A stretch of 64,000 bases of DNA, from positions 62,001 to 126,000 of IMG/VR virus record IMGVR_UViG_3300037010_001702; one strand, 5' to 3'. The notes under the pieces are model-generated. The model saw only the letters and a list, made by a program, of their open reading frames with translations. It ran no database searches and was not told the origin of the DNA. Shown here piece by piece: positions 10,057 through 51,022 of the stretch (the stretch's first letter is position 1; every line of letters begins with the position of its first letter). Position numbers and translations under genes: made by a program.

Positions 10057-10060
10057 ACTA

Positions 10061-10099
10061 TGTATTTCCACGATAGATTTATGATATAATCTATTTATA
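10061..10099. promoter_or_regulatory. Back-to-back promoters: + strand extended -10 TGATATAAT (10082-10090) and - strand late TATAAATA (10092-10099)
   Basis: Motifs read directly from the spacer between the endonuclease and the IntC gene. Confidence 0.65.
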
Positions 10100-10146
10100 G
10101 ACAAACGCAATATAATCACGTTTTTCCATCAGCATGGTACTACTAT

Positions 10147-10248
10147 ATGAAAATTCTAAATATCTCCAAAGTTAAAAGTCAATCTGACCGATATGACATT
10201 CAGACTGGTACTAAAAACTTTTTTGCGAACGGTATTCTCGTCCATAAC
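10147..10248 (+). mobile_element. Split intein C-fragment (IntC, 34 aa)
   Basis: Blocks F/G ending His-Asn, Ser+1 at 10249. Confidence 0.9.
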
Positions 10249-11857: not shown

Positions 11858-11908
11858 GTATATCTCTAGAAGATGGTATTCAAGCATCTATTTCAAAAGG
11901 ATAAACAT

Positions 11909-12967
11909 ATGAGAAAACTTGCAACAATTAGAAAAATTTCAAAACTATTACCAATTCCCGGCGCAGATGCAATTGAAGTTGCTGTTGTGGATGGGTGGGA
12001 AATAGTCGTGAAAAAAGGAGATTTTGAAGAAGATACTTTAATAGTGATGTGTGAAATCGATTGCTGGGTGCCACATGAGCTTGCTCCATTCCTGTCAAAG
12101 GGAAAGGAACCCCGGGTCTATGAAGGCATTAAGGGTGAGAAGCTTCGCACGGTAAAGTTGCGTGGTGCTCTGTCGCAGGGTCTTCTGCTTCCACTTTCTG
12201 TGCTTGGTAAGCCTGAAGAAGTCTTTTCTATTGGTGATGAATGCATTGGTACTGACGTGTCAGAACAACTTGGTATCATTAAGTGGGAACCAGTTCTTCC
12301 TGCTAATATGGCTGGACAAGTGAAGGGTCTGTTCCCTAGCTTCATTCGCAAGACTGATCAGGAGCGCTGCCAGAACATTGTCGATGAGATTTTCATTGAC
12401 AACAAGGATGCTCGCTACGAAGTTACTATCAAGCTTGATGGTTCTTCTATTACTACTTACAAGTTCCAGCAAGACACTGGTGTCTGCTCTCGTAACCTTG
12501 AACTGGAGATTAACGAAGAGAACAAGGACAACTCGTTTGTTAAGATGTTCCAGGGTTCTATGCTTCAGGCTGTTCTTGATAAGATGGGTAAGAACATTGC
12601 AGTTCAAGGTGAGCTGATGGGTCCTTGTATCCAAGGCAACCGTGAAAACTTCAAGGATACAAAGTTCTTTATCTTCGAAGCGCAGTTCATTGATGATCAG
12701 CGTAAGCTGACACCTGATGAAAGAAAGGCTCTGTTTGCTGAACTTATGGAATGCGGCGCAGATGCACATATTGTGAATCACGTGCCTATCCTACACTACA
12801 ATGTTACTCTTGCTGAGCTTGGCATCTTCAATGTTGAAGACCTTCTAAAGTTTGCTGATGGCCCGTCGATTAACAACCCTATTAGGGAAGGATTGGTGTT
12901 CAAGCGAATGGACGGTGGATTCTCGTTCAAGGCAATTTCGAATAAATTTTTGGAAAAGGAAAAATGA
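11909..12967 (+). CDS. RNA ligase, DRB0094/Rnl5 family
   Basis: MRKLATIRKI..L.PIPGAD.IE...VDGW.IVVKKG OB domain; KTDQERCQN, KLDGSS, QGELMG, REGLVFK, SFKAISN. Confidence 0.92.
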   Translation: MRKLATIRKISKLLPIPGADAIEVAVVDGWEIVVKKGDFEEDTLIVMCEIDCWVPHELAPFLSKGKEPRVYEGIKGEKLRTVKLRGALSQGLLLPLSVLGKPEEVFSIGDECIGTDVSEQLGIIKWEPVLPANMAGQVKGLFPSFIRKTDQERCQNIVDEIFIDNKDARYEVTIKLDGSSITTYKFQQDTGVCSRNLELEINEENKDNSFVKMFQGSMLQAVLDKMGKNIAVQGELMGPCIQGNRENFKDTKFFIFEAQFIDDQRKLTPDERKALFAELMECGADAHIVNHVPILHYNVTLAELGIFNVEDLLKFADGPSINNPIREGLVFKRMDGGFSFKAISNKFLEKEK

Positions 12968-23855: not shown

Positions 23856-24851
23856 ATGAAACGTTTGATTTTTGATACCGCAAATATTCTATTTCGGGCA
23901 CACGCTGCGAACAGCATGCATAACAAGGGCGGCAGTCCTGAGGAACAAGCTGGACTTGCGATGCATGTTGCACTGCGTTCACTTAACAAGTACTACAAGC
24001 AATTCAAACCAGATCAGGTAGCTGTAACATTTGAAGGTACAAACAACTGGCGCAAGGAATACACGAAGTCTGAAAAATGTATCTCAAAAAAGGTGTACAA
24101 GGCAAATCGTGTGAAGGATTCCTCGATGGAACCATTCTTTGAGCTAATTAAATCATTTGAAGAGCTAGCTCGCAACCACACCTCCCTGGTGTGTCTGTCA
24201 AACCCACTCCTTGAAGGTGACGATCTTTTTGGCGGCTATGTCCGTCGATTCACAGCCCAAGGTGACGAGGTAATCGGTGTTTCCGGAGATAAGGACTTCG
24301 TCCAGCTTTGGAAGCACAAGGGATTCACTCTCATTAATCCAGACAATGGAAAGCCCCGTACCCTTATTGACACTTGTGGTGTTGATGATGCAGATTACTT
24401 TATGTTTGAAAAAGCATTCCGTGGAGATAAGGGAGATAACGTTTTCTCAGCGTATCCACGAGTTCAAGCAAAGCGTCTTCAAAAGGCTTTCAGTGACGAC
24501 TATGAACTAACCAAGCTGATGAATGAAACATGGACATTTACAGATCCAGATACTAATGAGGTTACAACCTATCTCGTATCCGATCTGTTCGAGGAAAACA
24601 ATCGCCTCATGAACCTTGAATGCCAACCAGACAACATCAAGAAGGTTATTGAAGAGACTCTCGATCACGAGTTAGTCAATCACGGAAAATTCTCCTTCTT
24701 TGCATTTACTAAATTCTGCGGAAAATTCGGTTTAAAACAAATTGCAGAAGACTCTACAGCGTTTGTTAATATGTTCAGTGTAACAGGCCAGAGGTCTCCG
24801 TTGAAAGAAGAGACCTCTGCAGTTCGTAAGAAAGCATTACTGGAGTTTTAA
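23856..24851 (+). CDS. rnh: T4 RNase H-like 5'-3' exonuclease / flap nuclease
   Basis: D..N..FR, WRK....YKANR, EGDD, SGDKDF.QL, GDKGDN. Confidence 0.92.
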   Translation: MKRLIFDTANILFRAHAANSMHNKGGSPEEQAGLAMHVALRSLNKYYKQFKPDQVAVTFEGTNNWRKEYTKSEKCISKKVYKANRVKDSSMEPFFELIKSFEELARNHTSLVCLSNPLLEGDDLFGGYVRRFTAQGDEVIGVSGDKDFVQLWKHKGFTLINPDNGKPRTLIDTCGVDDADYFMFEKAFRGDKGDNVFSAYPRVQAKRLQKAFSDDYELTKLMNETWTFTDPDTNEVTTYLVSDLFEENNRLMNLECQPDNIKKVIEETLDHELVNHGKFSFFAFTKFCGKFGLKQIAEDSTAFVNMFSVTGQRSPLKEETSAVRKKALLEF

Positions 24852-25300
24852 TGAAAGCATTCAATTTATCTAAGAAGTCTTTGCATTGGCATCTTGCTGT
24901 CACTTATGGTAATCACTGCGAGTGGGATACTGACCCTGATCTCTGTAGTTATTTACAACGCGTTGTACAGGGTGTAATTGTAGCCTCGCTAGCAGCATTT
25001 GTTGGTGGGTTAGGCATTGGTGTTCCATTTGGCGAGCTACTTGCTTGGATAGCATATGTTGCAGCAAATGAACTTGTGCCTATGACTGTACCAGCTGCAG
25101 CAGCCATGCTCATAATCTTTGCAGTAGTTGTATTCGTGTGTGGATTTCTTCTGTTTAATACTGATAGGGGAGAAGAAATTGTTGGCGTCATCAAAAAGAA
25201 TATCAGAGTGTCAATACCTAAACCTAAGCAGGAATCGTTTATCGTGCTAGCATATCATAGCTTTAAAGATAAGACGTGTGTAAGACTGTCAATTCAATAA
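24851..25300 (+). CDS. Membrane protein
   Basis: Two to three hydrophobic helices. Confidence 0.65.
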   Translation: MKAFNLSKKSLHWHLAVTYGNHCEWDTDPDLCSYLQRVVQGVIVASLAAFVGGLGIGVPFGELLAWIAYVAANELVPMTVPAAAAMLIIFAVVVFVCGFLLFNTDRGEEIVGVIKKNIRVSIPKPKQESFIVLAYHSFKDKTCVRLSIQ

Positions 25301-26013: not shown

Positions 26014-26024
26014 CAATGACGCTG

Positions 26025-26060
26025 CTGGGACCTGGAGAAATTCAGGTCCCAGTTTTGTTT
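26025..26060 (+). terminator. Intrinsic terminator
   Basis: CTGGGACCTG...CAGGTCCCAG followed by TTTTGTTT. Confidence 0.8.
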
Positions 26061-26193
26061 TATATTACCATTTGATATAATGAATGATACTCCTAGAGTA
26101 TAAATAAAATTTCATCATCTATATTGATATGAAAGCTCTGCTCTCTAACGTAAGAAAGTATGACCAACCCCTAAACAAGGAAGGAAAAACCCA

Positions 26194-26850: not shown

Positions 26851-27090
26851 TTATATCAGCAGCACGTGTGCTATAAAATGTTCTCGACCAGTAAGTCTAA
26901 CTAAATTATCCTTATCATTTGTCTGCGAAATACAAAGTGGAATTATGTGATGAAGTTCAGCATATTCTAAAGGCTGATCCCTGTTTAAAGCTTTTTCCAT
27001 CAAGTTATAATAGCATTTTGAATACTTGTTATGTTTAAACAGCTTCGTCTTGGTGATCTGATTAAGGAAAAGGTTCATTTTACACTCCAC
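26851..27090 (-). pseudogene. Truncated HNH homing endonuclease
   Basis: NKYSKCYYNL...ELHHIIPLC.....DNLVRLTGREHFIAHVLL, then stop; DNA-binding tail absent. Confidence 0.8.
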
Positions 27091-28008
27091 AAAGATTGGT
27101 ATGTTGAGAAGTGTCCATGCTGTAACGATTACAAAAACAGAGCTGGATTTAAATTTGAAGGTGATGCAATTATTTACAACTGTTGGAACTGTTCCACAAC
27201 TTCTGTGTATGAAGAATTCTCCGGTAAGATTTCTAGAAAGATGCGAAGCATTCTAAATGCACATGGCATCGATGATACAGAAATTAGTGCAGTGGTTAAT
27301 AGTTCCTTCTTCACTGAAAAGAAAGAAGAGAAAATAACCCTCGCAACTCTTTCCAAGATTAACACTTCAACCCCAACAGTAAAGCTTCCAGAGAAATCGT
27401 TCCAAATTGGAAACTGCCCAGAGTTTATTGATTATCAAATCAAGTTAGTAGAGTATCTTGAAAGCAGAAAAGTGGATGTGAATAAGTTCCCATTCTACTT
27501 CAGCCTAGAAGATCGATTCAAGGATCGCGTCATCATTCCTTACTACCGTAATGGTAAGTTAATCTATTGGCAAGCACGGACAATTCACGACCATGAAAAG
27601 AAGCGATATGACAATGCACCAGTTGGTAGAGAAGCTGTTCTCTTTAACTACGATGCATTGAACTCTTACTCAGCAGAACCGCTCCTTGTTTCCGAAGGTG
27701 TCTTTGATGCTATGATGTTCAATGGTGTCGCTACTCTTGGAAGTAAGCTCACTCCAGCGCAGTTAGAACTCCTACATAAATCAAATCGTAAGTTAGTCTT
27801 CGTAATTGACAAGGATGAAAATGGAAGACACCTTGCGGAGAAGGTGCTCAAGGAAGGATGGCAAATTGCATTTGTTCCTAATGGGTCAAGAGACCTGAAT
27901 GAATGTGTAGTAAAGCATGGCAGAACCTGGACTGCTTGGCAGCTCATGAAGAACCTGCCGAAGGACGCTGACTCTGCGCAGCTTGCTATCAATATAAATT
28001 GTACATAA
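27031..28008 (+). CDS. gp61: DNA primase (gp61-like)
   Basis: CPCC...YNCWNC Zn finger, RVIIP, EGVFD, DKD..G TOPRIM. Confidence 0.92.
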   Translation: MFKQLRLGDLIKEKVHFTLHKDWYVEKCPCCNDYKNRAGFKFEGDAIIYNCWNCSTTSVYEEFSGKISRKMRSILNAHGIDDTEISAVVNSSFFTEKKEEKITLATLSKINTSTPTVKLPEKSFQIGNCPEFIDYQIKLVEYLESRKVDVNKFPFYFSLEDRFKDRVIIPYYRNGKLIYWQARTIHDHEKKRYDNAPVGREAVLFNYDALNSYSAEPLLVSEGVFDAMMFNGVATLGSKLTPAQLELLHKSNRKLVFVIDKDENGRHLAEKVLKEGWQIAFVPNGSRDLNECVVKHGRTWTAWQLMKNLPKDADSAQLAININCT

Positions 28009-28021
28009 CGCTGGAGATATT

Positions 28022-29338
28022 ATGGATTCAGAAAAGCAAAAAGTTATGTTGAGTTGCATGTTAGGTAATCGAGACCTAATGGCAATGTGTTCAGGTATAA
28101 TTAAGCCATCCTACTTTGACCCTTCGCTCAAGAAGACAGTGAAGTTCATGCAAGAGTATTTTACGAAATATAAGGATGTGCCCAAGTTAGGTGCCGTGAA
28201 GGCTGAGACTGGTATTACACTTGAAGATCTTGGTAAGATTGAAAAGTCTGACATGAACTATGTCTCTACTGAAGTAGAAGAGTTCTGCCGCAATCGAGCA
28301 ATCACCGAAGCAATCCTACAGGGCCCAGACCTTCTTGAAAAGGGAGACTTCGGCGAAATTTTGAGGACACTTCGAGATGCCATCTCAGTGGGTCTTCAAC
28401 GCGATCTTGGTATGGATTACTTTGCTAATCCTGAAGAACGCATGAAGCGCACCCATGATACATCAGCTAGAATCTCCACTGGCATCCAAGAGCTTGACGA
28501 TCTTATCGGTGGCGGAATGTCTCGGCAGGAACTTCTCATGTTTGCCGCTAACTCTGGTGGTGGTAAGTCGATGAACATGTTGAACATCGCTAAAAATTTC
28601 CTGGCTCAAGGGTTGCATGGCGTTTATATTTCCCTTGAAATGTCTGAGGATGTTGTGTCAAAGAGACTTGACTCCATGATCACTAAGATTGCCCAGGAGA
28701 ACCTACTTAGGGAACTCACAAAGGCCGCTAACCTGGTTGAAAAGGCAAGTGAGACATATGGTAAGTTCCGGGTCAAGAGAATGCCCGAGAATCGAACCAA
28801 TATAAATACAATTCGATCATGGTTACAGCAGTTAGAGCAGACAGAAGGTTTTGTACCTGACTTTATCTGCGTAGATTATCTTGACATCATGGGTACCACT
28901 ATGAACATCTCGCTGGATAATCTGTTCATCAAGGATAAGTACGTTACTGAAGAAGTTAGAAGCTTAGGTTTTGACTATAATGCCATTATGATCTCCGCAT
29001 CTCAACTTGGACGTACAGCGATTGAGGCAGACAAGTTAAATCAGGCTCACATTCAAGGCGGCATCTCCAAGATAAATACAGCTGACTATGTAATCGGTAT
29101 TAAGCAGGATGACTTAATGAAAGCTGCTGGCGAAATTTACTACGAGTGCCTAAAGTCTCGTAATTCAAGTGGAGTTGGCAACCGAGCATTGTTAGGATGG
29201 GATGCAATCTCACTAACTGTTTCTTCTCTCAAGAAGAAAGGAGCTCTCGTCTTTAAGCCAAAGGTTAATATCGTGTTAGACGAGCGACAACCATCAACCA
29301 AGAAAGCAGACGGCTTATCAAGCCTGATGAATATTTAA
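28022..29338 (+). CDS. gp41: Replicative SF4 helicase (gp41/DnaB-like)
   Basis: ANSGGGKS, YISLEM, VDYLD, ASQLGR, KSR. Confidence 0.95.
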   Translation: MDSEKQKVMLSCMLGNRDLMAMCSGIIKPSYFDPSLKKTVKFMQEYFTKYKDVPKLGAVKAETGITLEDLGKIEKSDMNYVSTEVEEFCRNRAITEAILQGPDLLEKGDFGEILRTLRDAISVGLQRDLGMDYFANPEERMKRTHDTSARISTGIQELDDLIGGGMSRQELLMFAANSGGGKSMNMLNIAKNFLAQGLHGVYISLEMSEDVVSKRLDSMITKIAQENLLRELTKAANLVEKASETYGKFRVKRMPENRTNINTIRSWLQQLEQTEGFVPDFICVDYLDIMGTTMNISLDNLFIKDKYVTEEVRSLGFDYNAIMISASQLGRTAIEADKLNQAHIQGGISKINTADYVIGIKQDDLMKAAGEIYYECLKSRNSSGVGNRALLGWDAISLTVSSLKKKGALVFKPKVNIVLDERQPSTKKADGLSSLMNI

Positions 29339-29355: not shown

Positions 29356-29643
29356 ATGCAAGAAGCAACAGTACCAACAACAATCACAATCGACGGAACA
29401 GAGTATCCTGTTGCCGACTTCAGCGTAAACGTTCAACGTCTTGTTGAAATCCACGCTGAATGGCGCAATGAACTTGCGACAGAACGTCTTGCAGTAGCAA
29501 AGACAGAAGCTGCAATTCGCAGTCTTGACGCTGAGCTTACGCAGGCCGTTGCAGCTGAACTTAAGGCTAAGACAGCAGCTACAGCAGCTACAGCAGCTAC
29601 AGCAGCAGAAGAAGTTCCAGCTGCAGATGCTCCAGCCGCGTAA
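29356..29643 (+). CDS. Small coiled-coil protein with Ala-rich tail
   Basis: ITIDG.EY N-terminus; ACAGCAGCT x3 repeat; AAGGAG RBS. Confidence 0.7.
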   Translation: MQEATVPTTITIDGTEYPVADFSVNVQRLVEIHAEWRNELATERLAVAKTEAAIRSLDAELTQAVAAELKAKTAATAATAATAAEEVPAADAPAA

Positions 29644-29663: not shown

Positions 29664-29695
29664 AGGGAACAGATCGAAAGGTTTGTTCCCTTTTT
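29664..29695 (+). terminator. Intrinsic terminator
   Basis: AGGGAACAGATC-GAAA-GGTTTGTTCCCT-TTTT. Confidence 0.8.
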
Positions 29696-29717: not shown

Positions 29718-29725
29718 TATAAATA
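29718..29725 (+). promoter_or_regulatory. Late promoter TATAAATA
   Basis: Exact consensus 31 nt before ATG 29756. Confidence 0.8.
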
Positions 29726-29755: not shown

Positions 29756-32700
29756 ATGACATCAATCCTTTCAACCGTTGTTTTACTAGAAGGAATCACC
29801 CATCTGGAGGATTTGCCTCCTGGCGAGTTCATTCGCACCGTAAAAACCCTAAAGGATAAGATAATCACTGAGAAGCTAGATGGAGCTAACCTTTGGTTTG
29901 GTCTAGATGAGAATGGTTTATTCACATCACGTGAAGGCAAGTCACCGAAGAAAGGTCGCTTCTATGACGTGAGTGACTATCCAATGGTAGCTAACTATAA
30001 CGGTTTCAGAGCTGCTCACCTTGCTCTTGAAAAAGCAAAGCCAGTCATTGAGCGTTACCTTGAAGAAGGTGACATGGTTGAAGTTGAAATTCTGTTTGGA
30101 CGTCAGCCAAATACGGTTACGTACGGGGTTTCAGACAAGAACTTCATTGTCATTCTTCGTGGGGTGAATGGCACTCCAGATGACAGAATTAAAGCCCTTG
30201 CAAAGGCTGTTGACAAGAAGACTGTAACAGTTGAGTCAACAATCGTTTCATCTCCAGATGGTGAAATACTTCAGCAAGACGATGAGAAGGTTAAGTGGGA
30301 ATTCACCCAAGTAGCACCTATCAGCACAAAGAAGGTTGACACATCCGGTGCTGATGACCTTCTTAAGCAGCTTGAGAAATTCCTGGGCATGAAGAATGAC
30401 GTGCTAAATGATAAGACGAACGGGGAAGTTGCAGAGCTTTCACTTAATAAGGTTCCAAAGGAACAACGAGAAGAAGCTAAGGCAGAGCGTGACAAGGTTC
30501 TTGCACACATTCTAAACAACTTCAAGATTCCAATCAAGGAAATGCTCCTTGGTAAATTCGTGCGCAAGATCAAACCATTCCTTCAAGATTCAAACCTTCA
30601 TCCATCTGAGGACATCGGCGTTGAGGGTGTTGTCGTTAGAGACCCTGTAACTGGTAGTCAAATAAAGATCGTTGACAAGGACGTGTTCACAGCTATCAAT
30701 GCTTTTAACTCTGCTGTAAGAAACAGCATCGCTGGATTGGTTAGAACTACTGATCAAGATGCGGCGATTGAGATGAGAGGTGGAGCATTCGGCCAAGCTA
30801 AAATTCGAATTGCTGAAATTATGGGTGCTAAGGAATTAGCGATGTCCTCTGGTGTAAAGCGCTTCATCACAAAGTTCAAGGCTGAAACTCCTCAAGCTAC
30901 AGCTCAAGCCCTTGCAGACAGCCTTCACATTGAAAGCTTTGGTTCAATCAAGACGAAGGTATCTTCTATCTTGAAGAACGCAATTAGCGAGGTAAATTCT
31001 ATTCTTGACGAATTCAAGAAGGACTCTGGTGAATTCAAGCTTAAGCTAAAAACTGGTAAGGAAATAGGGATCACTCCAGAGATTATGAAGCGTACTCTTA
31101 CAGCGTTTGCAGAAACCAAGAAGGACATCTTGGACGTAAATGCCCGCGTTCTTCGTAGCTCAACGCCTACAGAGCTTGTCCTCGCGCTGTACGGAAAAAC
31201 AATTGAATCCCTATTTGATGGAGCCGAAGACGTGAAAGAATCATATACACTTTTGAAAACAATCAATGAGGATGATGCTGCATCAGGAGCATCGCAAGGT
31301 GCAACCCCTGCCACCAATGGTGCAGTACCAGAGGTAATTTCAGGAACAACATCTTCAGCAGTGATTGCACCACTTCCTAAGATGCTTATGAAGGGTGCTA
31401 AGATGATAACCCGCCGCATCAGAAAGTTTAAGGCTGGCAGCAGGTTCCCAATTCCTAAAGCTATTAAAGCTGAAGGGAAAATTCCCCTTCACAAGTCAAT
31501 GACTGAAGATTGGGCTCACACAAGAGACCTGAAGTTTGCTACAGACGTTGACGATACTGCAGGTGCGAAGAATGACATCGAGTTTAATAGACTGCGGAAC
31601 AATGTTAATATAGGAAATAAGGTAACTCAGATGGACGTTAACCGTTATCTTGATAAAGCCCACGAGCTTAACGATGAAGTTGACACAGTTACCTTTGGTA
31701 TGGAAACAGATGATGGCAAGATCGCAAAGGTCTACGTTAACGCGGCACAGGCTGACGAATTTGAAAAGGCTTTATCAGTCCTTTTAGGGCAGCAGGATGA
31801 TCTTGAAGTTGTCATCAATGACCTTGCAGCTAAGTATGACATCGTTGACATTGAATGGCCAGAAGGTTACGTCTCAAATACCTCTGGCGACGCGCTGGCT
31901 GCGACAGCCGAACAAACTCCTGAAGAGCCAGTTGTCACTAAAGTAAATGATGATGGAGAACCAGAAATTCACCTTGGACTTGAAGGTGGAGAAAGTGATG
32001 AGCTTGATTCATCTGACCAGCAGGACGTAGCAAGTGCTGAATCTGATATTGAAAGCGCTGCAGACACTGATCTCAATCTTGATGCTGACGATGAGGAAGA
32101 TAGGGGTGACGATGAGGAAGATAGGGGCGGTGATGAGGGCGGTGATGATAATGAGCTTGACGTTAGTGGCAGTGATGACACGGACAAGCCAAAGAAAAAG
32201 AAGAAAAAGAAGGATAAGGATAAGGATATTGACTTGGATATTGACTTGAACGCATCTGACATTGAAGAAGCAGCGTGTAGAAGCGGTAGAGTTATTAGCG
32301 AAGATTCCACTGCTGCACAATCATCTATTAGCGCATTCTTGCAGTCAATGGGCGTGGATACATCTTCCAACACGTCAGTTGCAGCTCAGCTAGCTTCACC
32401 AAAGGTGAAGGCAAACCTTAGCAAGGTAGGTGCTAATAGTTCACTTTTGAAGACCATCAATAATGCTTCAGCTAAACTGGCACCTGCTAAGCCTAACGTA
32501 GCACCTTCAAATGCCGCACCGCAGTTTAATGGATTCGTAGCTAAGGGTGACATCATCGCTGAGGATGCGGTTGATCAAGGCAAGTGGATTATCGCTAAGC
32601 TTGGCTCCGCTGGCCTGATGCTAAGAGTTACTGGTCTATCATTCAAGATAGATGACCAGGAGACTGTAAAGCTCCAGCACATTCTTGAAAAGCACAAGAC

Positions 32701-32863
32701 TGGTTCTGTAATCTCAACCGAGGATGTCAGAATCTTGTTCAAGCCAGCCGAAGATGGTGCTTTTGCAGTTAAGAACGTTGATGACGAATCCGAATTTCCA
32801 GATGGCATCTACCTATCGCGCAAGCAAGTAGATGAAATTTTAGAGATGATCGAAACATATTGA
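29756..32863 (+). CDS. Large late protein with N-terminal ligase-type nucleotidyltransferase fold (DUF6267-like) and acidic low-complexity region
   Basis: THLED, TEKLDG, EVEILF, EGVVV, KIVD motifs; D/E tract and poly-K. Confidence 0.7.
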   Translation: MTSILSTVVLLEGITHLEDLPPGEFIRTVKTLKDKIITEKLDGANLWFGLDENGLFTSREGKSPKKGRFYDVSDYPMVANYNGFRAAHLALEKAKPVIERYLEEGDMVEVEILFGRQPNTVTYGVSDKNFIVILRGVNGTPDDRIKALAKAVDKKTVTVESTIVSSPDGEILQQDDEKVKWEFTQVAPISTKKVDTSGADDLLKQLEKFLGMKNDVLNDKTNGEVAELSLNKVPKEQREEAKAERDKVLAHILNNFKIPIKEMLLGKFVRKIKPFLQDSNLHPSEDIGVEGVVVRDPVTGSQIKIVDKDVFTAINAFNSAVRNSIAGLVRTTDQDAAIEMRGGAFGQAKIRIAEIMGAKELAMSSGVKRFITKFKAETPQATAQALADSLHIESFGSIKTKVSSILKNAISEVNSILDEFKKDSGEFKLKLKTGKEIGITPEIMKRTLTAFAETKKDILDVNARVLRSSTPTELVLALYGKTIESLFDGAEDVKESYTLLKTINEDDAASGASQGATPATNGAVPEVISGTTSSAVIAPLPKMLMKGAKMITRRIRKFKAGSRFPIPKAIKAEGKIPLHKSMTEDWAHTRDLKFATDVDDTAGAKNDIEFNRLRNNVNIGNKVTQMDVNRYLDKAHELNDEVDTVTFGMETDDGKIAKVYVNAAQADEFEKALSVLLGQQDDLEVVINDLAAKYDIVDIEWPEGYVSNTSGDALAATAEQTPEEPVVTKVNDDGEPEIHLGLEGGESDELDSSDQQDVASAESDIESAADTDLNLDADDEEDRGDDEEDRGGDEGGDDNELDVSGSDDTDKPKKKKKKKDKDKDIDLDIDLNASDIEEAACRSGRVISEDSTAAQSSISAFLQSMGVDTSSNTSVAAQLASPKVKANLSKVGANSSLLKTINNASAKLAPAKPNVAPSNAAPQFNGFVAKGDIIAEDAVDQGKWIIAKLGSAGLMLRVTGLSFKIDDQETVKLQHILEKHKTGSVISTEDVRILFKPAEDGAFAVKNVDDESEFPDGIYLSRKQVDEILEMIETY

Positions 32864-32879
32864 TTTTCGAATAAGACAT

Positions 32880-33551
32880 ATGAAATTTAATTATGAAGAG
32901 ATGGAAGCTCTCTCCTTCAAGGGAAAGCGCTTTTATCAAACCCCAAGTGGCAAGTTCTATCCATCAATCACTACGGTGTTGGGTGGTACTACCCCTCCTG
33001 AAAAAGCTGATGCTTTGAAAAATTGGCAGGCATCTTTAGGAATGGACGTAGCGCAAAAGAAGACGCAAGAAGCTGCCGATAGGGGTACATCAGTGCACTT
33101 GATGATTGAGCGCTACTTGAAGAAGGAACCCGTTATCCAGGGTGAGAAGTTCGACAGCAGCATTATTACGTCCTTCAATGGGCTGAAGCTAAAGCTGAAC
33201 GCTATTGAAGAAGTTTGGGGACAGGAAGTTGCTCTCTATTCTGACCTTCTTGAAATTGCCGGTCGGTGCGACTGCATTGGTGTTTATAAGGGTAAGGAAT
33301 GCATCATTGACTTCAAGACGGCTGGCCGCTTGAAGGGCGATAAGGATATCGATGATTACAAACTGCAGCTGACAGCATATGCGATTATGCACAATGAGAT
33401 ATTTGGAACAGATATCTCAGATGGTGTTATTCTTATGACATCTGCTGGGGGATTCCCACAGGAGTTTAGAGTTAATCTTTTAGACTATGTTGATAAGTTG
33501 GCAGATAGAGTGGATAAATTTTACGTACAGTTAGAAGCTGAAATAGCTTAA
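32880..33551 (+). CDS. PD-(D/E)XK exonuclease
   Basis: PSITTVL, RGT.VH..IE, AGR.D, IIDFKT, Q..AY. Confidence 0.9.
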   Translation: MKFNYEEMEALSFKGKRFYQTPSGKFYPSITTVLGGTTPPEKADALKNWQASLGMDVAQKKTQEAADRGTSVHLMIERYLKKEPVIQGEKFDSSIITSFNGLKLKLNAIEEVWGQEVALYSDLLEIAGRCDCIGVYKGKECIIDFKTAGRLKGDKDIDDYKLQLTAYAIMHNEIFGTDISDGVILMTSAGGFPQEFRVNLLDYVDKLADRVDKFYVQLEAEIA

Positions 33552-35672: not shown

Positions 35673-36308
35673 ATGAAAAGCCCATTCATCATAATTCAAG
35701 AATTTCTATCTCCCCTAGTTTGCGAACAAATCGTCAATGACATCAAGATACTTGATCCAGACAGGGACGAGGCGGGAGACCCTAAGAAGCTTGAGCGCTA
35801 TAACCTTATGTGGGAAGAGGAAATTGCTTCACGCTTTAGAGAGCACATTCCTGAAGTTGAAGAGCACTACTCAGCTACATATCGTGGTTTAGAGAAGCCA
35901 GTATTTCAGTACTTTCCGGAGAACTCTAAAGCTCCAGCCCAAAATCCAGGTTGTGAAAATTCAACTTACCTTCGCAAGAAGTGGGTTATGAACAAGGACG
36001 TTGACCTTGTCGGATACATCTGGTTAAAGGACTTTAATGATCAGGTTCCTCTTGATCCAAACCATGAAGTCTTTGGTGGCAAACTTGAATTCCCAGTCTA
36101 CAACTTTAGCATTGTACCACAGCGAGGTACGCTGGTTCTATTCCCAGCAGGTCCTCACTTCATCACAGTCATATCACCTATCCTTCTTGGCGACCTTTAT
36201 CAGATTAAGCTGAACGTGTGTATCAAGGAAACTGGCGGTGGCAGATGGTTTTATCAGCCCAAAAACTTCCCCGGTAAGTGGGAACAGTGGTTTGAAGGCC
36301 ACTTCTAA
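35673..36308 (+). CDS. 2OG-Fe(II) oxygenase-fold protein with degenerate active site
   Basis: FLS...C..I, GG.LEFP, P..G.LVLFP framework; canonical HxD/H/R residues not present. Confidence 0.7.
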   Translation: MKSPFIIIQEFLSPLVCEQIVNDIKILDPDRDEAGDPKKLERYNLMWEEEIASRFREHIPEVEEHYSATYRGLEKPVFQYFPENSKAPAQNPGCENSTYLRKKWVMNKDVDLVGYIWLKDFNDQVPLDPNHEVFGGKLEFPVYNFSIVPQRGTLVLFPAGPHFITVISPILLGDLYQIKLNVCIKETGGGRWFYQPKNFPGKWEQWFEGHF

Positions 36309-44244: not shown

Positions 44245-45198
44245 TTAGAAGGCAAGAATCATCGCTTTACCGGATATGGGCATCAGGAACGATATGAGGA
44301 TAGTATTGCTATCTATGATCTTGATTTTTTCTGGAATGATGACTTCTTGATTAGTATCGTAGATGGTAGTGTTAATATTCACAGAATTAAGGTGATGAAC
44401 GACCGTCCAGATCGTATCGACAACAAGTTGAGTGTAAGCGTAACCTCTAACGGTTCCACCTGCGCCACCCATGTCTGCCTTAACATTGATTGCCTCAAGG
44501 GCTTGTTGGACGTTTACAGCCCCAGGAAGGGTTGTAATTGGGGTAATGTCGATATCACTAGCTGGATGTCTGAATGCCGTACCATTTTCGTGGGCGGTCA
44601 TCTCAGATCTTAGCTCGGCAATGTCAACTCCGTTGATGAGACCCCCAACGGTTAAATTTTGAGTAGCGAAAAGATTACCACTTGAATCTATTCTGAAGAC
44701 TGGTGCAGTGCCATATGTTCTACGAACTGAAACAAGATCAACAACCGGGATGACACCGAAGTCTGGCTCAATTTTTAGCGCAGTAGTTGTACCAAGCTTT
44801 GGCGAAATTTGCCAGTGATCACTGTCTTGAATAACAGTATCAATGGTGGATGACGTGCCTTGAACTTCCAGATCACCAGTGATAGTTACCTTCCCAGTTA
44901 GAGCATCAATTCTTAGAAAGTGCCCATCGTTTGCAATGTCTGAGATAACGAAGTCCTTACCTAAAGTAAGAAAGATCCCAGCTGTACCATTGCTTGGAGG
45001 TGTGTTGTTGTAAATTGCCTGGAGCGTAAGCGTAGAACCGCCGCCCGCAGATGACGACCCGTCATCAAAAAGCAACCCTCTACCACCTACAGTGAATGTG
45101 AGATTGCTCGTACCACCAGTATTGATGATCGCGCCATCTGGAAGCTGACTATAGATACCGTCGGTATCCAGGATTAGGGGCTTATTAGTGTCGCTCAT
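44245..45198 (-). CDS. Virion structural protein with C-terminal W.V.H.L domain
   Basis: Beta-rich fibre-like body, NVQQALE, shared terminal domain. Confidence 0.7.
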   Translation of the reverse strand: MSDTNKPLILDTDGIYSQLPDGAIINTGGTSNLTFTVGGRGLLFDDGSSSAGGGSTLTLQAIYNNTPPSNGTAGIFLTLGKDFVISDIANDGHFLRIDALTGKVTITGDLEVQGTSSTIDTVIQDSDHWQISPKLGTTTALKIEPDFGVIPVVDLVSVRRTYGTAPVFRIDSSGNLFATQNLTVGGLINGVDIAELRSEMTAHENGTAFRHPASDIDITPITTLPGAVNVQQALEAINVKADMGGAGGTVRGYAYTQLVVDTIWTVVHHLNSVNINTTIYDTNQEVIIPEKIKIIDSNTILISFLMPISGKAMILAF

Positions 45199-46870: not shown

Positions 46871-49800
46871 TTAACTTAATGTGAGCCTGAACGGTACAGA
46901 AAGTGTCGTTTTGAATGTGAACGAATTTGCATCTGTAAGTTGCGGCATAGCTGGGAATACAATTGAGCTAGGAATTGGTGCATCGTAAACACCAGTTCCA
47001 GTGTAAACAACCTCACCAGAAGGTAGGGTGTTAGCGATGAGCTGCTCCAGGGAGATCGTTGGCGAACCGCTGTAGCTTCTGTTCTGAACTACAACCATGT
47101 ACTCGTCTGCTGCTTGAGTAACAACCATTCCTGTTGTCTGAACATTCATGTCAAAGAATAGAACAAACTTAGCTGCTACGAAGTCCAGGTCAGTGTCGTA
47201 TGGATATGAGTCATACGCGTATGCATCATAACCGGTTGTTGGATCTGGATCGATTGGACATTCACGTTCCATGATAGTGAGACCTTCAATGATTGCCGTG
47301 CTAGCTTGAACAGCCGTATCACCATCAACGTTGGGAACATCTCCAGTGCTTTGAGTAATAGAGATAGAAGGTCCAGGAGTTGGGTTGATGATTACCCAAT
47401 CGCTATCATTTCCAGTATACTCATAGTTTCCACTTCCCGCAGGAGACTCAACAATGCCAGTAACTATTCCAGTTGTAGAGTCATCGTAGGCAGTTGCACC
47501 ATAAGGAAGGACGTCATAGCCTCCCGTGCTAATAGAGGCTGCACCACCTTCGATAATATGTGCATTAACGATATCAACAAGTGAAATATCTTCAATAATG
47601 TCCAGATACTGAATAGGTTCATCCGCTATGTTAATGCTTGAGATGTCTTGGAAGTTTAGTCTAACACGAGCATAAGTTCTGAAATTTTCAGTAATCTTTA
47701 CTCGAATCTTCTGACCGTACGATTGGTCTGGAAGGAACATCAGTGAAAAGTTAGTACCAAATTTCAGGTACTGGGATACAAAAGCAGAATCAAGAACGAT
47801 TGTTGCTGATGCATTTCTGTTTGATGTTTCATAGCGAGGCTGGAGGATGTGGAATACCTTCACATCTGGATTGCTACCCAAGTAACCTTCAATGTAGGTA
47901 GCAAGATCAGAGAACTCAGCTGCAGACACCGGGACGTTGTTAGCTATGCGATCGTAGTACTTAAGTGTAATTGGGATCCAGTCATTTGAGTCTGGAGCAA
48001 GCTCGGGGAATAGTAGGTTAGCACCTTCAATTCTGAACTTAAAGGTGTCATTAGCTGCTTTGTCAATTATGAACTTATCTCTATCAGTTACGTTCTTGAA
48101 GATAACAGAACCATGACTGTGGTAGAGTGGAAATATTTCCTGGTTGAAGATGAGTGGAACAGTACATTCACCAACCTCAGCATCATAGCCATGAACCCAG
48201 TACTCGCTCTCATCATAGCCAACATCAGTTGTGTAGCTGTACATTGGAGCAAGGTAGATGTGAATGACATCACCAACTTGGTATGGAATTCCATTCGCCA
48301 TTGATGGAATCTTAAATGCTGCACGTCCATCGGTCCAAGGTGTGTCAATCTTTAATCCAGCCAGCTGACCATAAACGTTGCTGACAACGGTTGCTGTAGT
48401 ACTTGACACGAATGTAATCGTGTAAAAAGATGGCTCTGCTGAAGAGTGAGGAACAGGATCGATCTCTGGACCATTTATTCCTGCTGGAATAACAGCTGGC
48501 GGAGTGTAGGCAGCTGTAAGTGGAAGCGGAACAAAGTTGGTGAGGTCATATGGTGTACCGCCTCCACCAACGAACGTTCCATTACCGTATGCGATGCTGT
48601 TCAATCGACGACCACGGTAACGTGTCCAAGAGTAACCATCAATTGAAGATGAGACCCATCCATCAACATTATCAACACCAACAAATTTCCCAGCAGCGAA
48701 AATGATGTCGGAGAACGTACCATCATTGAAGACTGAAAGGTTAGCCCATGTTGACCCGTCAAGTGAACGAAGAATTGTCCCCCGATCACCGACAGCGATG
48801 AACATTCCAAGTGTTGCAGAATAGGTAACAGCTGAAAGATGATTGACTGTATTAGATGGAACTTGGACCCAGTCAATACGATTTACTGATGTTAGAATTG
48901 TTCCATGTTCACCCACAGCAACAAGAATGCTATTGCCAAAGGTGATGTCATTTAGATTTGTTGTTACTCCAGAGCTTTGAGTAGCCCAACCAGAACCATT
49001 TACGGTTGAGATTATTGTACCACTATTACCTACCACAACTGTCACGCTTAGCAGTGTGGATGGGTTTGACGGATCAGTAAGAGCGTTAGCTACTTGAACA
49101 AAGCCATTCAGATCTTCGTTAACGTGGGTGACTGCCTTTTCCCAGATGATTGCTGGACGAAGGGGAAGGTAAGGATATCCCGTGCTAGGATCAACAGCGA
49201 CGTGAATGTAATCAGCTGGATTCGCTGGATAACCAGTTGTGGAGTCTATCGCGTAAACAGCTGGATCTTGCACACCAACTCCGGCTGTTCCATTTGGACC
49301 AATGGTAACTAGGTAGTTTAGCTGAGTTGGGAATATTGTCGTGAGATCAGATGTCCACGTTACACCATCGGTAGACGTACCGACTATAGAGTCAGCCCCA
49401 GTGATGTAGAAAATTCCATTGTTGAATTCTACGGACTTTACTATCTGACCATTGGCGACTGAAATTTTCCAGTCGCCGTTGCTAGCATCTACTGATGTAA
49501 GGATGGTTGAATTGTAAGCGTGCGCAAAGTACTCAAGCTTTGGAATCTTAAGGCCAATCTTTCCATTCCAATACCACTCACCAATGACAGCATTTGGCTG
49601 CCAACCAGATATGCTACCGTAAACAAGATAGTGCTCAACCTTATCACCAACAGTAAAGTTAAATGAATCACCAGCGAAGTAACCATCGAGTGATGGGATA
49701 AGGGTGAATTGGATGTAATCATCTTTATAGCCACAGCCATCTGCTAGGTTGATAGTTAAGCCATTTGTTCCGTAAAGCTTCCCAGATGCATTGATAGCCT

Positions 49801-51022
49801 GAAGCGTGTATGTACCATCACCATTAAAGTTAATAGCCCAGTGAGTGGAAACGTTTGTGTAGCCAAGGGAGTCAGTATGTACCTCAATCGCTGGATATGT
49901 TGTGTTAGCTGGTCTAGCTGAACCGGGAGCAAAGGTAGGGACACCCACCATAGCAATAGGATTTGTCTTGATGAGTGACCACGATTCTTCTGGAGCTGTA
50001 GGAGCTACAACAATGCGAGAATGCGGTGTTAGCGTGATCGTATTGCCAACAAGCATCTCAGTAATACCGTCAAGAGCTGGTCCCATCTTAAATGAGATGA
50101 TTGGATTTACAAAGCTGCCATTCAAAACTGTGACGCCAATATCACCCGAGATTGATCCCTTTACATTTACGTAGTTGAGGTCATCAGGATTTGAAGCGAG
50201 AGTAACTGGGTCAACTATAATAGTTGAATTACCAAAATTGTCAACGCGCGTAAGAGTCCACTCTTCATAGTTGCCACCAGTAATTCCAGTTACTGTAGCA
50301 AATGGTTTAGTTACATCAGCATAGAGGAGAGTACCTTCATTCTCAGGGAATGCTGTAGCGTCCTTTACATTTCTATCCTTCCAGCGCTGAAGTGGTGCGC
50401 CGCTGCCCTGAATAACGTCAAATGAATAAACGCCACGAGACAAGAAGTAGTCAACCGTATCTTGGCAATGAAGTGTAGCATCATATGGGTTAGAATCTGC
50501 TGGTAGGTTAGGAGTGTAAAGTGGGTCCCGCTCGATGCGGTACTTGTACTGTCGTACGTCAGTGATGCCCGGCCCATCCCATCTAATGTTGCTGAATACC
50601 CTGTTTGTTGAGATGTTACCAATCCCAGGAATTTGCGTGTCATCATCAACTCTTCCAGGACGGCGAATGTTATCAATGCCAGCGTAAAACTCCGATCTGG
50701 ATGAGTGGCTAGCGAACTTATTAACCGATGTAAGTGGTACCTGCCACGTCGTTCTGCTACCATCGGACATGATGTCATGGTACCAAGATTGTGAACGACG
50801 AGCTCTAATCTTAGGTGTGCCTATCTTTGGAGATATATCTGCCCCAAGGATGGCAAGAAGCTGGTCATCCTCATCAATCTTTACGTTAACGTCATCATGA
50901 AAGATGTACTGTTCAACAATGGCGGAAAGCTTTACGTGATAAGGCTTTACGTCAAGTACGTAATTGATAAGACTATCAATGTGCCCACTGCTGACGGTTA
51001 AGTAATTGTTAGTAGAGCTCAT
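46871..51022 (-). CDS. Large baseplate-associated protein with Asp-box beta-propeller
   Basis: YV.DVKPYHVKL N-terminus; repeated S.DG..W motifs; YD..PYD repeats; start 51022 preferred to 51052. Confidence 0.75.
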   Translation of the reverse strand: MSSTNNYLTVSSGHIDSLINYVLDVKPYHVKLSAIVEQYIFHDDVNVKIDEDDQLLAILGADISPKIGTPKIRARRSQSWYHDIMSDGSRTTWQVPLTSVNKFASHSSRSEFYAGIDNIRRPGRVDDDTQIPGIGNISTNRVFSNIRWDGPGITDVRQYKYRIERDPLYTPNLPADSNPYDATLHCQDTVDYFLSRGVYSFDVIQGSGAPLQRWKDRNVKDATAFPENEGTLLYADVTKPFATVTGITGGNYEEWTLTRVDNFGNSTIIVDPVTLASNPDDLNYVNVKGSISGDIGVTVLNGSFVNPIISFKMGPALDGITEMLVGNTITLTPHSRIVVAPTAPEESWSLIKTNPIAMVGVPTFAPGSARPANTTYPAIEVHTDSLGYTNVSTHWAINFNGDGTYTLQAINASGKLYGTNGLTINLADGCGYKDDYIQFTLIPSLDGYFAGDSFNFTVGDKVEHYLVYGSISGWQPNAVIGEWYWNGKIGLKIPKLEYFAHAYNSTILTSVDASNGDWKISVANGQIVKSVEFNNGIFYITGADSIVGTSTDGVTWTSDLTTIFPTQLNYLVTIGPNGTAGVGVQDPAVYAIDSTTGYPANPADYIHVAVDPSTGYPYLPLRPAIIWEKAVTHVNEDLNGFVQVANALTDPSNPSTLLSVTVVVGNSGTIISTVNGSGWATQSSGVTTNLNDITFGNSILVAVGEHGTILTSVNRIDWVQVPSNTVNHLSAVTYSATLGMFIAVGDRGTILRSLDGSTWANLSVFNDGTFSDIIFAAGKFVGVDNVDGWVSSSIDGYSWTRYRGRRLNSIAYGNGTFVGGGGTPYDLTNFVPLPLTAAYTPPAVIPAGINGPEIDPVPHSSAEPSFYTITFVSSTTATVVSNVYGQLAGLKIDTPWTDGRAAFKIPSMANGIPYQVGDVIHIYLAPMYSYTTDVGYDESEYWVHGYDAEVGECTVPLIFNQEIFPLYHSHGSVIFKNVTDRDKFIIDKAANDTFKFRIEGANLLFPELAPDSNDWIPITLKYYDRIANNVPVSAAEFSDLATYIEGYLGSNPDVKVFHILQPRYETSNRNASATIVLDSAFVSQYLKFGTNFSLMFLPDQSYGQKIRVKITENFRTYARVRLNFQDISSINIADEPIQYLDIIEDISLVDIVNAHIIEGGAASISTGGYDVLPYGATAYDDSTTGIVTGIVESPAGSGNYEYTGNDSDWVIINPTPGPSISITQSTGDVPNVDGDTAVQASTAIIEGLTIMERECPIDPDPTTGYDAYAYDSYPYDTDLDFVAAKFVLFFDMNVQTTGMVVTQAADEYMVVVQNRSYSGSPTISLEQLIANTLPSGEVVYTGTGVYDAPIPSSIVFPAMPQLTDANSFTFKTTLSVPFRLTLS

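What the first reader, a model, noticed from the sequence alone, without database searches (positions are those of the whole stretch)
29756..32863. Third ligase-fold protein: a late, probably head-packaged polyprotein
Seen: ordered nucleotidyltransferase-like motifs (EKLDG, SR, EVE, EGVVV, KIVD) in the first ~310 aa and a late promoter. Repeated hydrophobic-x-E sites (LLEG, VKES, INED, MTED, IEEA, ISED, IAED) fall near apparent domain boundaries, and there is a D/E tract with K7. Known: T4 gp21 protease cuts after (I/L)-x-E. Inference: it is matured in the prohead and ejected, delivering an RNA ligase or AMP/GMP-transferase before any phage transcription. The substrate is unknown.
Basis: partly seen in the sequence, partly recalled or inferred. 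Interest (0 to 1): 0.6.

Follow-up and report, generated by a model that had tools for sequence, protein, structure and literature searches.

The report
Ligase-like jumbo-phage protein, probably head-packaged
This 1035-residue jumbo-phage protein joins an RNA-ligase-type enzyme to a single-strand nucleic-acid-binding module through linkers carrying conserved T4-style protease-site motifs, so it is probably cut up inside the phage head and injected with the DNA, which has not been described for a ligase-type enzyme.

Summary
Residues 13-320 fold as an RNA-ligase-type covalent nucleotidyltransferase (Z 8-9 to REL1, NgrRnl, T4 Rnl2 and Rnl1). The catalytic residues K40, D42, G43, R59, E111, E290, G291 and K304 are invariant in relatives.

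New findings:
- The protein is a fusion of two genes that are adjacent but separate in other jumbo phages. The fused form is common (>80 clusters).
- The C-terminal ~105 aa has a Whirly/PUR-like single-strand-binding fold.
- The raw count of hydrophobic-x-Glu sites is at chance. Four sites (E12, E505, E584, E849) are nevertheless strongly conserved and lie in disordered linkers. Three of them sit in a repeated motif, [FY]SL[LI]KS[IV]xE.
- The N-termini of relatives resemble the T4 capsid-targeting peptide MKTYQEFIAE.
- The genome encodes an S77 prohead protease and a gp55-like late sigma factor. TATAAATA lies 31 nt upstream of both this gene and the protease gene.
- The RsoM2USA homologue (ORF438) was reported among the abundant virion bands. 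The PA5oct homologue was not detected in virions.

Verdict: the ligase fold is established. Head packaging and proteolytic maturation are plausible (~50%) but unproven. The substrate is unknown.

The parts
29664..29691 (+). Intrinsic-terminator-like hairpin (12-bp stem, T-run) that closes the upstream primase-helicase-small-ORF unit
29718..29725 (+). TATAAATA, a T4-type late-promoter-like box 31 nt upstream of the ATG
   Evidence: 9 in window vs 2.3 expected. The same box at the same spacing precedes the prohead protease ORF. A gp55-like sigma factor is in the genome.
29756..32863 (+). Whole ORF, 1035 aa, 112.7 kDa, pI 4.8
29756..29791 (+). N-terminal 12-residue disordered peptide ending in LLE before G13. 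Candidate propeptide or capsid-targeting signal.
   Evidence: pLDDT <50 for aa 1-11. L10/E12/G13 kept in 78/78 fused homologues. 86/95 family members have hydrophobic-x-E in the last 10 residues before the fold, against a 16-21% baseline.
29792..30715 (+). RNA-ligase-type covalent nucleotidyltransferase domain (aa 13-320). Motif I is K40xDG (K40 codon at 29873-29875), Ia R59, III E111, IV E290-G291, V K304.
   Evidence: AF2 pLDDT 89.7. VIA Z 9.0/8.9/8.3/8.1 to REL1, NgrRnl, T4 Rnl2 and T4 Rnl1. Foldseek top rows are all RNA ligases. Invariant residues.
30716..31225 (+). All-helical domain (aa ~321-490) that always accompanies the nucleotidyltransferase domain in the family
   Evidence: Only generic helical-bundle matches, plus alignments to Trl1 that extend into it.
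31235..31273 (+). Conserved linker motif 2 (aa 494-506, KESYTLLKTINED; family consensus KESFSL[LI]KS[IV]xED). Candidate protease site after E505.
   Evidence: E505 75/81. pLDDT <50.
31274..31480 (+). A/G/T-rich linker plus basic segment (aa 507-575). In split-gene relatives this is the C-terminal tail of the first gene.
   Evidence: aa 506-584: 8.2 kDa, pI 10.5
31481..31510 (+). Conserved linker motif 3 (aa 576-585, IPLHKSMTED; consensus FSL[LI]KS[VI]xED). It equals the N-terminus (MSLLK...) of the separate partner gene in relatives. Candidate protease site after E584.
31541..31864 (+). Highly conserved small alpha/beta domain (aa 596-703; core DEVDTVTFG.ETDDGK), the hallmark of the partner family
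   Evidence: 58% identity to P0111. Invariant columns. pLDDT >90 for aa ~640-700. Only weak fold matches, Z about 5.
31880..32293 (+). Acidic, disordered, length-variable tract (aa 709-846) containing K7 (aa 813-819, nt 32192-32212)
32294..32305 (+). Conserved [VIL]-x-E site (ISE849) at the end of the disordered tract. Candidate protease site.
   Evidence: E849 74/81; hydrophobic P3 plus Glu P1 in 64/76
32306..32479 (+). Helical segment (aa 851-908)
32534..32860 (+). C-terminal Whirly/PUR-like domain (aa ~927-1035), a predicted single-stranded nucleic-acid binder
   Evidence: VIA Z 9.5 (MRP1/MRP2), 8.7 (PBF-2 p24), 8.4 (Pur-alpha), 8.4 (StWhy2) over ~105 aa. Foldseek PURA probability 0.97-0.98.

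Best explanation
The gene encodes a late-expressed multi-module protein of a T4-related jumbo phage. Module 1 (aa 13-505) is a catalytically intact RNA-ligase-type covalent nucleotidyltransferase with its own helical domain. Module 2 (aa 506-584) is a small basic peptide. Module 3 (aa 585-849) is a highly conserved small alpha/beta domain followed by an acidic disordered tract. Module 4 (aa 850-1035) is a helical segment plus a Whirly/PUR-like single-strand nucleic-acid-binding domain. The modules are joined by disordered linkers carrying a conserved motif, [FY]SL[LI]KS[IV]xE, or a simpler hydrophobic-x-Glu site. These fit the specificity of the phage's own T4-type (S77, gp21-like) prohead protease. 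The most likely mechanism is as follows. The precursor is targeted to the prohead core by its N-terminal peptide, as T4 internal proteins are. It is cut after E12, E505, E584 and perhaps E849. The pieces then leave the capsid with the DNA, so a ready-made polynucleotide-end-joining or end-nucleotidylating enzyme and a single-strand binder act on incoming phage DNA or on host or phage RNA before phage genes are expressed. Shown: the ORF, the folds, the conserved catalytic residues, the fusion, motif conservation, and the protease, sigma factor and promoter box. Inferred: packaging, cleavage, ejection and substrate.
For: Fold and catalysis. Fusion of two neighbouring genes: RsoM2USA_438+437; a 771-aa gene plus a 671-aa gene with an ATGA overlap in L007; the fused form in >80 clusters at 48-71% identity. 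Whirly/PUR fold. Linker motifs are conserved while the flanking linker is gap-rich and disordered. N-terminal peptides in the family resemble the T4 IPII/IPIII capsid-targeting sequence MKTYQEFIAE; 86/95 carry hydrophobic-x-E just before the fold, against a 16-21% baseline. The partner family starts with MSLLK.. and has hydrophobic-x-E within 12 residues in 54/77. An S77 prohead protease is in the genome, and the MCP N-terminus has ..TLLE|G. The late-type promoter box has the same 31-nt spacing as at the protease gene, and a gp55-like sigma factor is encoded. Homologue RsoM2USA ORF438 is one of ~10 abundant SDS-PAGE/LC-MS bands of purified virions (PMC8504454); its numbering was checked against GenBank and the paper's supplement.
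Against: The PA5oct homologue EST35_0228 is not among 93 ESI-MS/MS virion proteins, although that list even includes abundant enzymes such as RNR, thymidylate synthase and DNA ligase. The RsoM2USA assignment is worded 'most likely correspond'. It lists 51.69 kDa against 62.4 kDa predicted, and it comes from gel bands that also include a putative transposase. The gene sits in conserved synteny with primase, DnaB helicase and a PD-(D/E)XK exonuclease. TATAAATA also precedes the non-virion gp32-like gene. The total number of hydrophobic-x-E sites is at chance. The conserved LxEG could be part of the fold, and the SLLKS motif could be a docking motif rather than a cleavage site. No experiment shows cleavage, ejection or nucleotidylation.
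Confidence: 0.5

Rival explanations
1. A cytoplasmic nucleic-acid repair or replication accessory that is not packaged. It would be a third RNA-ligase paralogue (or a DNA/RNA nick sealer) working with a Whirly-like strand binder or annealer beside the primase, helicase and exonuclease. The conserved SLLKS..E motifs would be docking or regulatory peptides. The RsoM2USA gel band would be a co-purifying contaminant.
For: Conserved synteny with primase, DnaB and the PD-(D/E)XK exonuclease in RsoM2USA, PA5oct and L007. PA5oct homologue absent from virions. Jumbo phages are known to carry several non-redundant RNA ligase paralogues (PMC7824862). The late box also drives the gp32-like gene. The best fold matches pair a nick-sealing ligase (REL1/Rnl2) with an annealing or ss-binding fold (MRP1/2, Whirly).
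Against: It does not explain why both gene families carry short N-terminal peptides ending in hydrophobic-x-Glu that resemble the T4 capsid-targeting sequence. It does not explain why the partner's N-terminal motif is kept inside the fusion. It does not explain the RsoM2USA virion band. A terminator plus a late box separates the gene from the replication genes upstream.
Confidence: 0.3
2. An abundant internal head or DNA-condensing protein in which the ligase fold is kept for binding only. The basic peptide and acidic tract would organise packaged DNA, and no nucleotidyl transfer would occur.
For: Coomassie-visible abundance of the RsoM2USA homologue. A strongly basic 8-kDa segment and a long acidic tract. 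The second lysine of motif V (KxK) is replaced, giving K304-I-V306.
Against: Every residue needed for step-1 chemistry (K40, D42, G43, R59, E111, E290, G291, K304) is invariant over >140 diverged sequences. That is not expected of a purely structural relic.
Confidence: 0.1
3. The long ORF is an assembly or annotation artefact that joins two genes.
For: The two halves are separate genes in RsoM2USA and L007.
Against: More than 80 independent clusters of 950-1540 aa from many samples carry the same fusion, with a conserved junction.
Confidence: 0.01

Closest known systems
ATP-dependent RNA ligases of the covalent nucleotidyltransferase superfamily (T4 Rnl2 / T. brucei REL1, Naegleria NgrRnl, T4 Rnl1, fungal Trl1 ligase domain)
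   Same: Same nucleotidyltransferase fold (Z 8-9, ~170-195 residues aligned). Ordered motifs I (KxDG), Ia, III, IV (EG) and V. A family member reaches the Pfam PF09414 cut-off. An all-helical domain follows, as in Rnl1 and Trl1.
   Different: Only 12-18% identity. The window protein itself scores below the Pfam cut-off (15-17 bits vs 27). There is a ~170-residue insertion between motifs III and IV. Motif V has a single invariant lysine (K-I-V-D-K/R). It has a cleavable-looking N-terminal peptide and is fused or linked to an unrelated partner. The phage already has Rnl1-like and Rnl2-like genes and a DNA ligase gene.
T4 internal proteins IPI/IPII/IPIII and Alt (capsid-targeted, gp21-processed, ejected with the DNA)
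   Same: A short N-terminal peptide ending in hydrophobic-x-Glu before a small residue. Some relatives are strikingly similar (MKTFKQF..IAE|G vs T4 MKTYQEFIAE|A). An S77 protease is present, the promoter is late-type, and one homologue is reported in virions.
   Different: No sequence homology beyond the peptide. It is far larger and multi-domain, with internal repeats of the motif, so it is polyprotein-like. The cargo is a ligase-type enzyme plus a nucleic-acid binder rather than an ADP-ribosyltransferase or an anti-restriction protein. Processing and ejection are untested.
Whirly / PUR-alpha / MRP1-MRP2 single-strand nucleic-acid-binding fold (a phage example is ChmC of Chimalliviridae, bioRxiv 10.1101/2023.09.22.559000)
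   Same: The C-terminal ~105 residues match the beta-beta-beta-beta-alpha repeat fold (Z 8.4-9.5; Foldseek probability up to 0.98).
   Different: 8-13% identity, a single ~105-aa unit at the end of a long protein, and neither oligomeric state nor binding is known. There is no relation to nucleus-forming phages.
Ralstonia phage RsoM2USA ORF438 + ORF437 (and PA5oct EST35_0228)
   Same: True homologues: 35% identity over 560 aa, 49% over the conserved partner domain, and 31% over aa 12-362, respectively. The neighbourhood is the same (primase, helicase, exonuclease).
   Different: There they are two separate genes (PA5oct has only the ligase-like gene) and are annotated as hypothetical. ORF438 is listed as a virion band, while PA5oct 0228 is not detected.

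Membership tests
Covalent nucleotidyltransferase superfamily (polynucleotide ligases / capping enzymes) | Motif I lysine in KxDG | tested here: met
   K40-L-D42-G43. Invariant in 60 family members and in 79/79 aligned fused homologues.
Covalent nucleotidyltransferase superfamily (polynucleotide ligases / capping enzymes) | Motifs III, IV and V in order | tested here: met
   E111 (III), E290-G291 (IV) and K304 (V) are invariant. The second lysine of the usual KxK is V306, and K/R308 follows.
Covalent nucleotidyltransferase superfamily (polynucleotide ligases / capping enzymes) | Nucleotidyltransferase fold | tested here: met
   AF2 pLDDT 89.7. Z 9.0 (1xdn), 8.9 (5cot), 8.3 (1s68), 8.1 (9do4). 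The top Foldseek rows are all RNA ligases.
Covalent nucleotidyltransferase superfamily (polynucleotide ligases / capping enzymes) | Formation of a covalent lysyl-NMP intermediate | not testable with these tools
   Needs a labelled ATP/GTP assay with a K40 mutant.
Pfam PF09414 RNA_ligase (Rnl2/DraRnl-like) | Score at or above the gathering cut-off (27 bits) | tested here: inconclusive
   The window protein scores 15.1-17.2 bits over motif I only. 17 of 60 relatives hit at E<=0.01. One (P0064) reaches 29.1 bits over profile positions 2-160.
T4-type capsid-targeted, prohead-protease-processed internal proteins | N-terminal peptide ending in (L/I)-x-E before the mature fold | tested here: met
   MTSILSTVVLLE|G. 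Residues 1-11 are disordered. Conserved in 78/78. The family-wide rate is 86/95 against a 16-21% baseline. T4 IPII/IPIII peptides were verified.
T4-type capsid-targeted, prohead-protease-processed internal proteins | Cognate S77 (gp21-like) prohead protease in the same phage | tested here: met
   PF03420 E 4e-25 and phrog_207 E 1e-55 at G000 146265-146879.
T4-type capsid-targeted, prohead-protease-processed internal proteins | Presence in purified virions | tested here: inconclusive
   Literature only. RsoM2USA ORF438 is listed among the abundant virion bands. PA5oct EST35_0228 is not among 93 MS-detected proteins.
T4-type capsid-targeted, prohead-protease-processed internal proteins | Actual cleavage after Glu, and ejection into the host | not testable with these tools
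   Needs N-terminomics or semi-tryptic proteomics and infection experiments.
Whirly / PUR-like ssDNA/RNA-binding fold | Fold match over the whole domain, standing above unrelated rows | tested here: met
   The top four VIA rows are all of this class (Z 9.5, 8.7, 8.4, 8.4; ~105 aa). The next unrelated classes are at Z<=6. The Foldseek top 10 are PURA or Pur-alpha. The domain's pLDDT is 90-97, but its alignment was shallow.
Whirly / PUR-like ssDNA/RNA-binding fold | Binding of single-stranded nucleic acid | not testable with these tools
   Needs EMSA or similar.

The most novel reading that the evidence does not exclude
A widespread clade of T4-related jumbo phages packages a polyprotein in the head. 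The prohead protease cuts it at a dedicated repeated motif into an active RNA-ligase-type enzyme, a basic peptide, an acidic protein and a Whirly-like strand binder, and all are injected with the genome. This would be the first ejected polynucleotide ligase or end-nucleotidylating enzyme. It would act on the entering DNA ends or on cleaved RNAs before any phage gene is expressed.
Probability: 0.35. Interest if true: 0.8.

Novelty: new variant of a known kind. Interest (0 to 1): 0.64.

Why it matters
If the packaging model is right, jumbo phages deliver a ready-made nucleic-acid end-joining enzyme and a single-strand binder with their DNA. That would be a new class of injected effector alongside T4 Alt, IPI and the virion RNA polymerases, and a possible pre-emptive answer to host nucleases that nick DNA or cut tRNAs. 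The repeated [FY]SL[LI]KS[IV]xE motif would be a usable signature for finding other head-targeted cargo and for engineering cargo delivery. Even if the protein is not packaged, this is a large uncharacterised RNA-ligase-like family: about 100 clusters of the standalone form and more than 80 of the fused form. It has an unusual architecture and an obligate, often fused, partner, and it is directly testable in cultured phages (RsoM2USA, PA5oct).

Tried and rejected
- **Direct family scans of the whole protein:** Pfam gave only a sub-threshold motif-I hit. PHROGs and NCBIfam gave nothing.
- **PDB sequence searches:** neither the single sequence nor the profile gave a meaningful hit.
- **ESM Atlas feature search of aa 575-720:** uninformative, scores <0.8.
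- **DUF6267 (PF19782):** it matched 9/60 relatives weakly, but a search of the phage genome and the control genomes returned nothing. I did not pursue it.
- **Partner as the phage's main SSB:** rejected. gp32 homologues exist in this genome, RsoM2USA, PA5oct and XacN1.
- **PA5oct EST35_0229 as the partner homologue:** rejected by BLASTP.
- **XacN1 ORF350 as the ligase-like gene:** rejected by hhalign, probability 0.2.
- **Enrichment test of CTS-like N-termini among PA5oct MS-detected proteins:** too few matches to be informative. One example is the MS-detected EST35_0227, which starts MTNKTFKRFLSTE.
- **Other proteomics sources:** the PA5oct supplement is not held. The MIJ3 proteomics covers only four proteins. 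The XacN1 band list is only in a figure.
- **RsoM2USA mass discrepancy:** 51.69 kDa is listed against 62.43 kDa predicted. ORF429 would be 51.58 kDa. I could not resolve this.
- **MAFFT --auto on 81 long sequences:** timed out. The FFT-NS-2 alignment used instead is rough in the variable C-terminal third.
Full report
**1. What is there**

The window is bases 62001-126000 of a 239,441-bp IMG/VR virus record judged about 67% complete, so this is a jumbo phage. The ORF at 29756-32863 (+) is open for 1035 codons.

- Upstream lie a DnaG-type primase (27031-28008), a DnaB-type helicase (28022-29338) and a 95-aa ORF.
- Downstream, 17 nt after the stop, lies a PD-(D/E)XK exonuclease (32880-33551).
- Between the 95-aa ORF and the target are a strong terminator-like hairpin (29664-29691) and TATAAATA (29718-29725), 31 nt before the ATG.

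**2. The ligase fold is real**

Direct family scans give only a sub-threshold PF09414 hit over motif I. The word search, however, finds about 100 clusters of a roughly 500-aa family on 340-380-kb contigs.

- Invariant residues in that family are K40, D42, G43, G49, R59, K62, E111, P118, N119, Y123, E290, G291 and K304.
- 17 of 60 members hit PF09414, and one reaches the curated cut-off.
- AlphaFold2 of aa 1-520 gives pLDDT 89.7 and pTM 0.87. Residues 1-11 and 492-520 are disordered.
- VIA-align over 48,161 chains ranks T. brucei REL1 (Z 9.0, 193 aa), Naegleria RNA ligase (8.9), T4 Rnl2 (8.3/8.2) and T4 Rnl1 (8.1) first.
- Foldseek's top PDB rows are all RNA ligases. BFVD returns the PA5oct homologue (E 1e-26) and then viral RNA ligases.
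- Residues ~321-490 form a helical domain that always accompanies the nucleotidyltransferase domain.

The phage also has an Rnl1-like gene (10147-11142), an Rnl2-like gene (11873-12967) and an ATP DNA ligase outside the window. 'Third ligase-fold protein' is therefore accurate. Multiple RNA ligase paralogues are known in jumbo phages (PMC7824862).

**3. It is a fusion of two neighbouring genes**

- In RsoM2USA the match splits into ORF438 (560 aa) and ORF437 (386 aa).
- In a 375-kb metagenomic contig, a 771-aa ligase-like gene overlaps by ATGA a 671-aa gene that carries the conserved domain aa 596-703.
- The fused form is not an artefact. More than 80 clusters of 950-1540 aa at 48-71% identity carry it.
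- Synteny with primase, helicase and exonuclease is kept in RsoM2USA, and with primase and helicase in PA5oct.

**4. The partner half**

AlphaFold2 of aa 550-1035 shows these parts:

- an ordered alpha/beta domain (aa ~625-701, pLDDT >90; the best conserved part of the whole protein)
- a disordered acidic tract (aa 709-849, including K7)
- helices (aa 851-908)
- a C-terminal alpha/beta domain (aa 932-1034, pLDDT 90-97)

The C-terminal domain matches MRP1/MRP2 (Z 9.5), the Whirly protein PBF-2 (8.7), Pur-alpha (8.4) and StWhy2 (8.4) over about 105 residues. Foldseek agrees, with PURA at probability 0.97-0.98. It is thus a Whirly/PUR-like, probably single-strand-binding, domain. The phage has its own gp32 homologue, so this is not the main SSB.

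**5. The cleavage-site idea**

Counting alone fails: [LI]xE occurs 14 times against 12.3+/-3.1 in shuffles. Conservation is what carries weight. In 81 fused homologues, hydrophobic P3 plus Glu P1 is kept as follows:

| Site | Kept |
|---|---|
| E12 | 78/78 |
| E505 | 72/80 |
| E584 | 62/79 |
| E849 | 64/76 |

- All four sites lie in low-confidence or disordered stretches between domains, and the surrounding linker columns are gap-rich.
- Sites 505 and 584 are the ends of a repeated motif with consensus [FY]SL[LI]KS[IV]xE[DE]. The N-terminus (consensus MxKLLKS[VI]VLLE|G) is a third, longer variant.
- In split-gene relatives, the partner protein begins with this motif (MSLLK..).
- IAE936 lies inside a strand of the Whirly-like fold.
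- IEE838 and VKE495 are not conserved as such sites.

If all four sites were cut, the products would be about 54.5 kDa (ligase plus helical domain), 8.2 kDa (pI 10.5), 29 kDa (pI 4.05) and 19.7 kDa.

**6. Head targeting**

- I verified from the T4 record that IPII and IPIII begin MKTYQEFIAE|A. That this is the capsid-targeting sequence, cut by gp21, is established knowledge.
- The N-terminal extensions of the ligase-like family look alike, for example MKTFKQFIFQKTPIAE|G, MKTTFSTFQKLFE|G and RsoM2USA ..MLTFKQYAQPILTE|G. 86 of 95 have hydrophobic-x-E in the last ten residues before the fold, against 16-21% for comparable windows in this genome's ORFs.
- The genome encodes an S77 prohead protease next to the portal, scaffold-like and gp23-type capsid genes.
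- It also encodes a gp55-like late sigma factor.
- TATAAATA sits 31 nt upstream of the protease ORF, just as it does for the target gene. The same box also precedes the gp32-like gene, so it marks late timing and not virion location.

**7. Proteomic literature**

- For RsoM2USA, PMC8504454 lists ORF438 among the ~10 most abundant SDS-PAGE/LC-MS bands of purified virions. I checked that the paper's numbering equals the GenBank locus tags and coordinates.
- The listed mass (51.69 kDa) does not equal the predicted 62.43 kDa, whereas the other listed masses equal predictions. This may be an error or a processed form.
- In PA5oct, the homologue EST35_0228 is not flagged, although 93 proteins were detected, including clear non-structural enzymes.

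The evidence for packaging is therefore mixed.

**8. Conclusion**

The fold, the intact active site, the fusion and the Whirly-like domain are well supported. Head packaging with proteolytic maturation is the best single explanation, at about 0.5. It is the only reading that accounts at once for the conserved linker motifs, the CTS-like peptides, the late unit and the RsoM2USA band. The main rival, at about 0.3, is a cytoplasmic repair or replication accessory. The substrate and the chemistry (ligation versus end nucleotidylation; ATP versus GTP) remain unknown.

Noticed in passing
G000 24592-24897, 157813-158223, 161320-162195, 168854-169510 (outside the window): Four other ORFs start with T4-CTS-like peptides: MKTSFKQFVQE|G, MIIFKNFLNE|A, MRPSFKEFLNE|S and ..MISFKQFLSE|A. 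Two of them are paralogues (phrog_11975) lying among the sheath and tube genes. They are candidate head-internal proteins.
   Followed up: partly
window 26024-26053 and 26099-26106; 29664-29691 and 29718-29725: The same three-part layout occurs twice: a strong terminator hairpin, then TATAAATA ~30-50 nt later, then a gene start. TATAAATA occurs 24 times in the 239-kb record, 9 of them in this window.
   Followed up: partly
window 9082-10119 (-) and 44245-45198 (-): A homing-endonuclease-like ORF lies immediately upstream of the Rnl1-like gene, and an HNH-endonuclease-like ORF lies among the structural genes.
   Followed up: no
window 46871-51052 (-) and 51009-59624 (-): Two giant ORFs of 1393 and 2871 aa lie next to a baseplate-wedge gene (59698-63411). 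The 1393-aa protein has no PHROG hit at all, and the 2871-aa one was not scanned.
   Followed up: no
window 29356-29643 (+): A 95-aa ORF sits between the helicase and the target. It has an alanine/threonine-rich repeat tail (..KTAATAATAATAAEE..). An ORF of similar length sits in the same position in RsoM2USA, PA5oct and L007. It has no family hit.
   Followed up: no
window 5036-5845, 35673-36308: A PhoH-like ATPase, and a protein with a weak 2OG-Fe(II) oxygenase hit that is conserved in RsoM2USA (ORF431, 46% identity).
   Followed up: no
L020 (PA5oct 150-200 kb): The published PA5oct 'virion' ESI-MS/MS list includes ribonucleotide reductase, thymidylate synthase, DNA ligase, FtsH, ClpP and MazG. 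Presence in that list is therefore weak evidence of packaging, while absence from it is fairly telling.
   Followed up: partly
PMC8504454, RsoM2USA ORF438: The paper gives 51.69 kDa for ORF438, but the deposited 560-aa sequence predicts 62.43 kDa. ORF429 predicts 51.58 kDa. This is either a typo, a mix-up or a processed form.
   Followed up: partly
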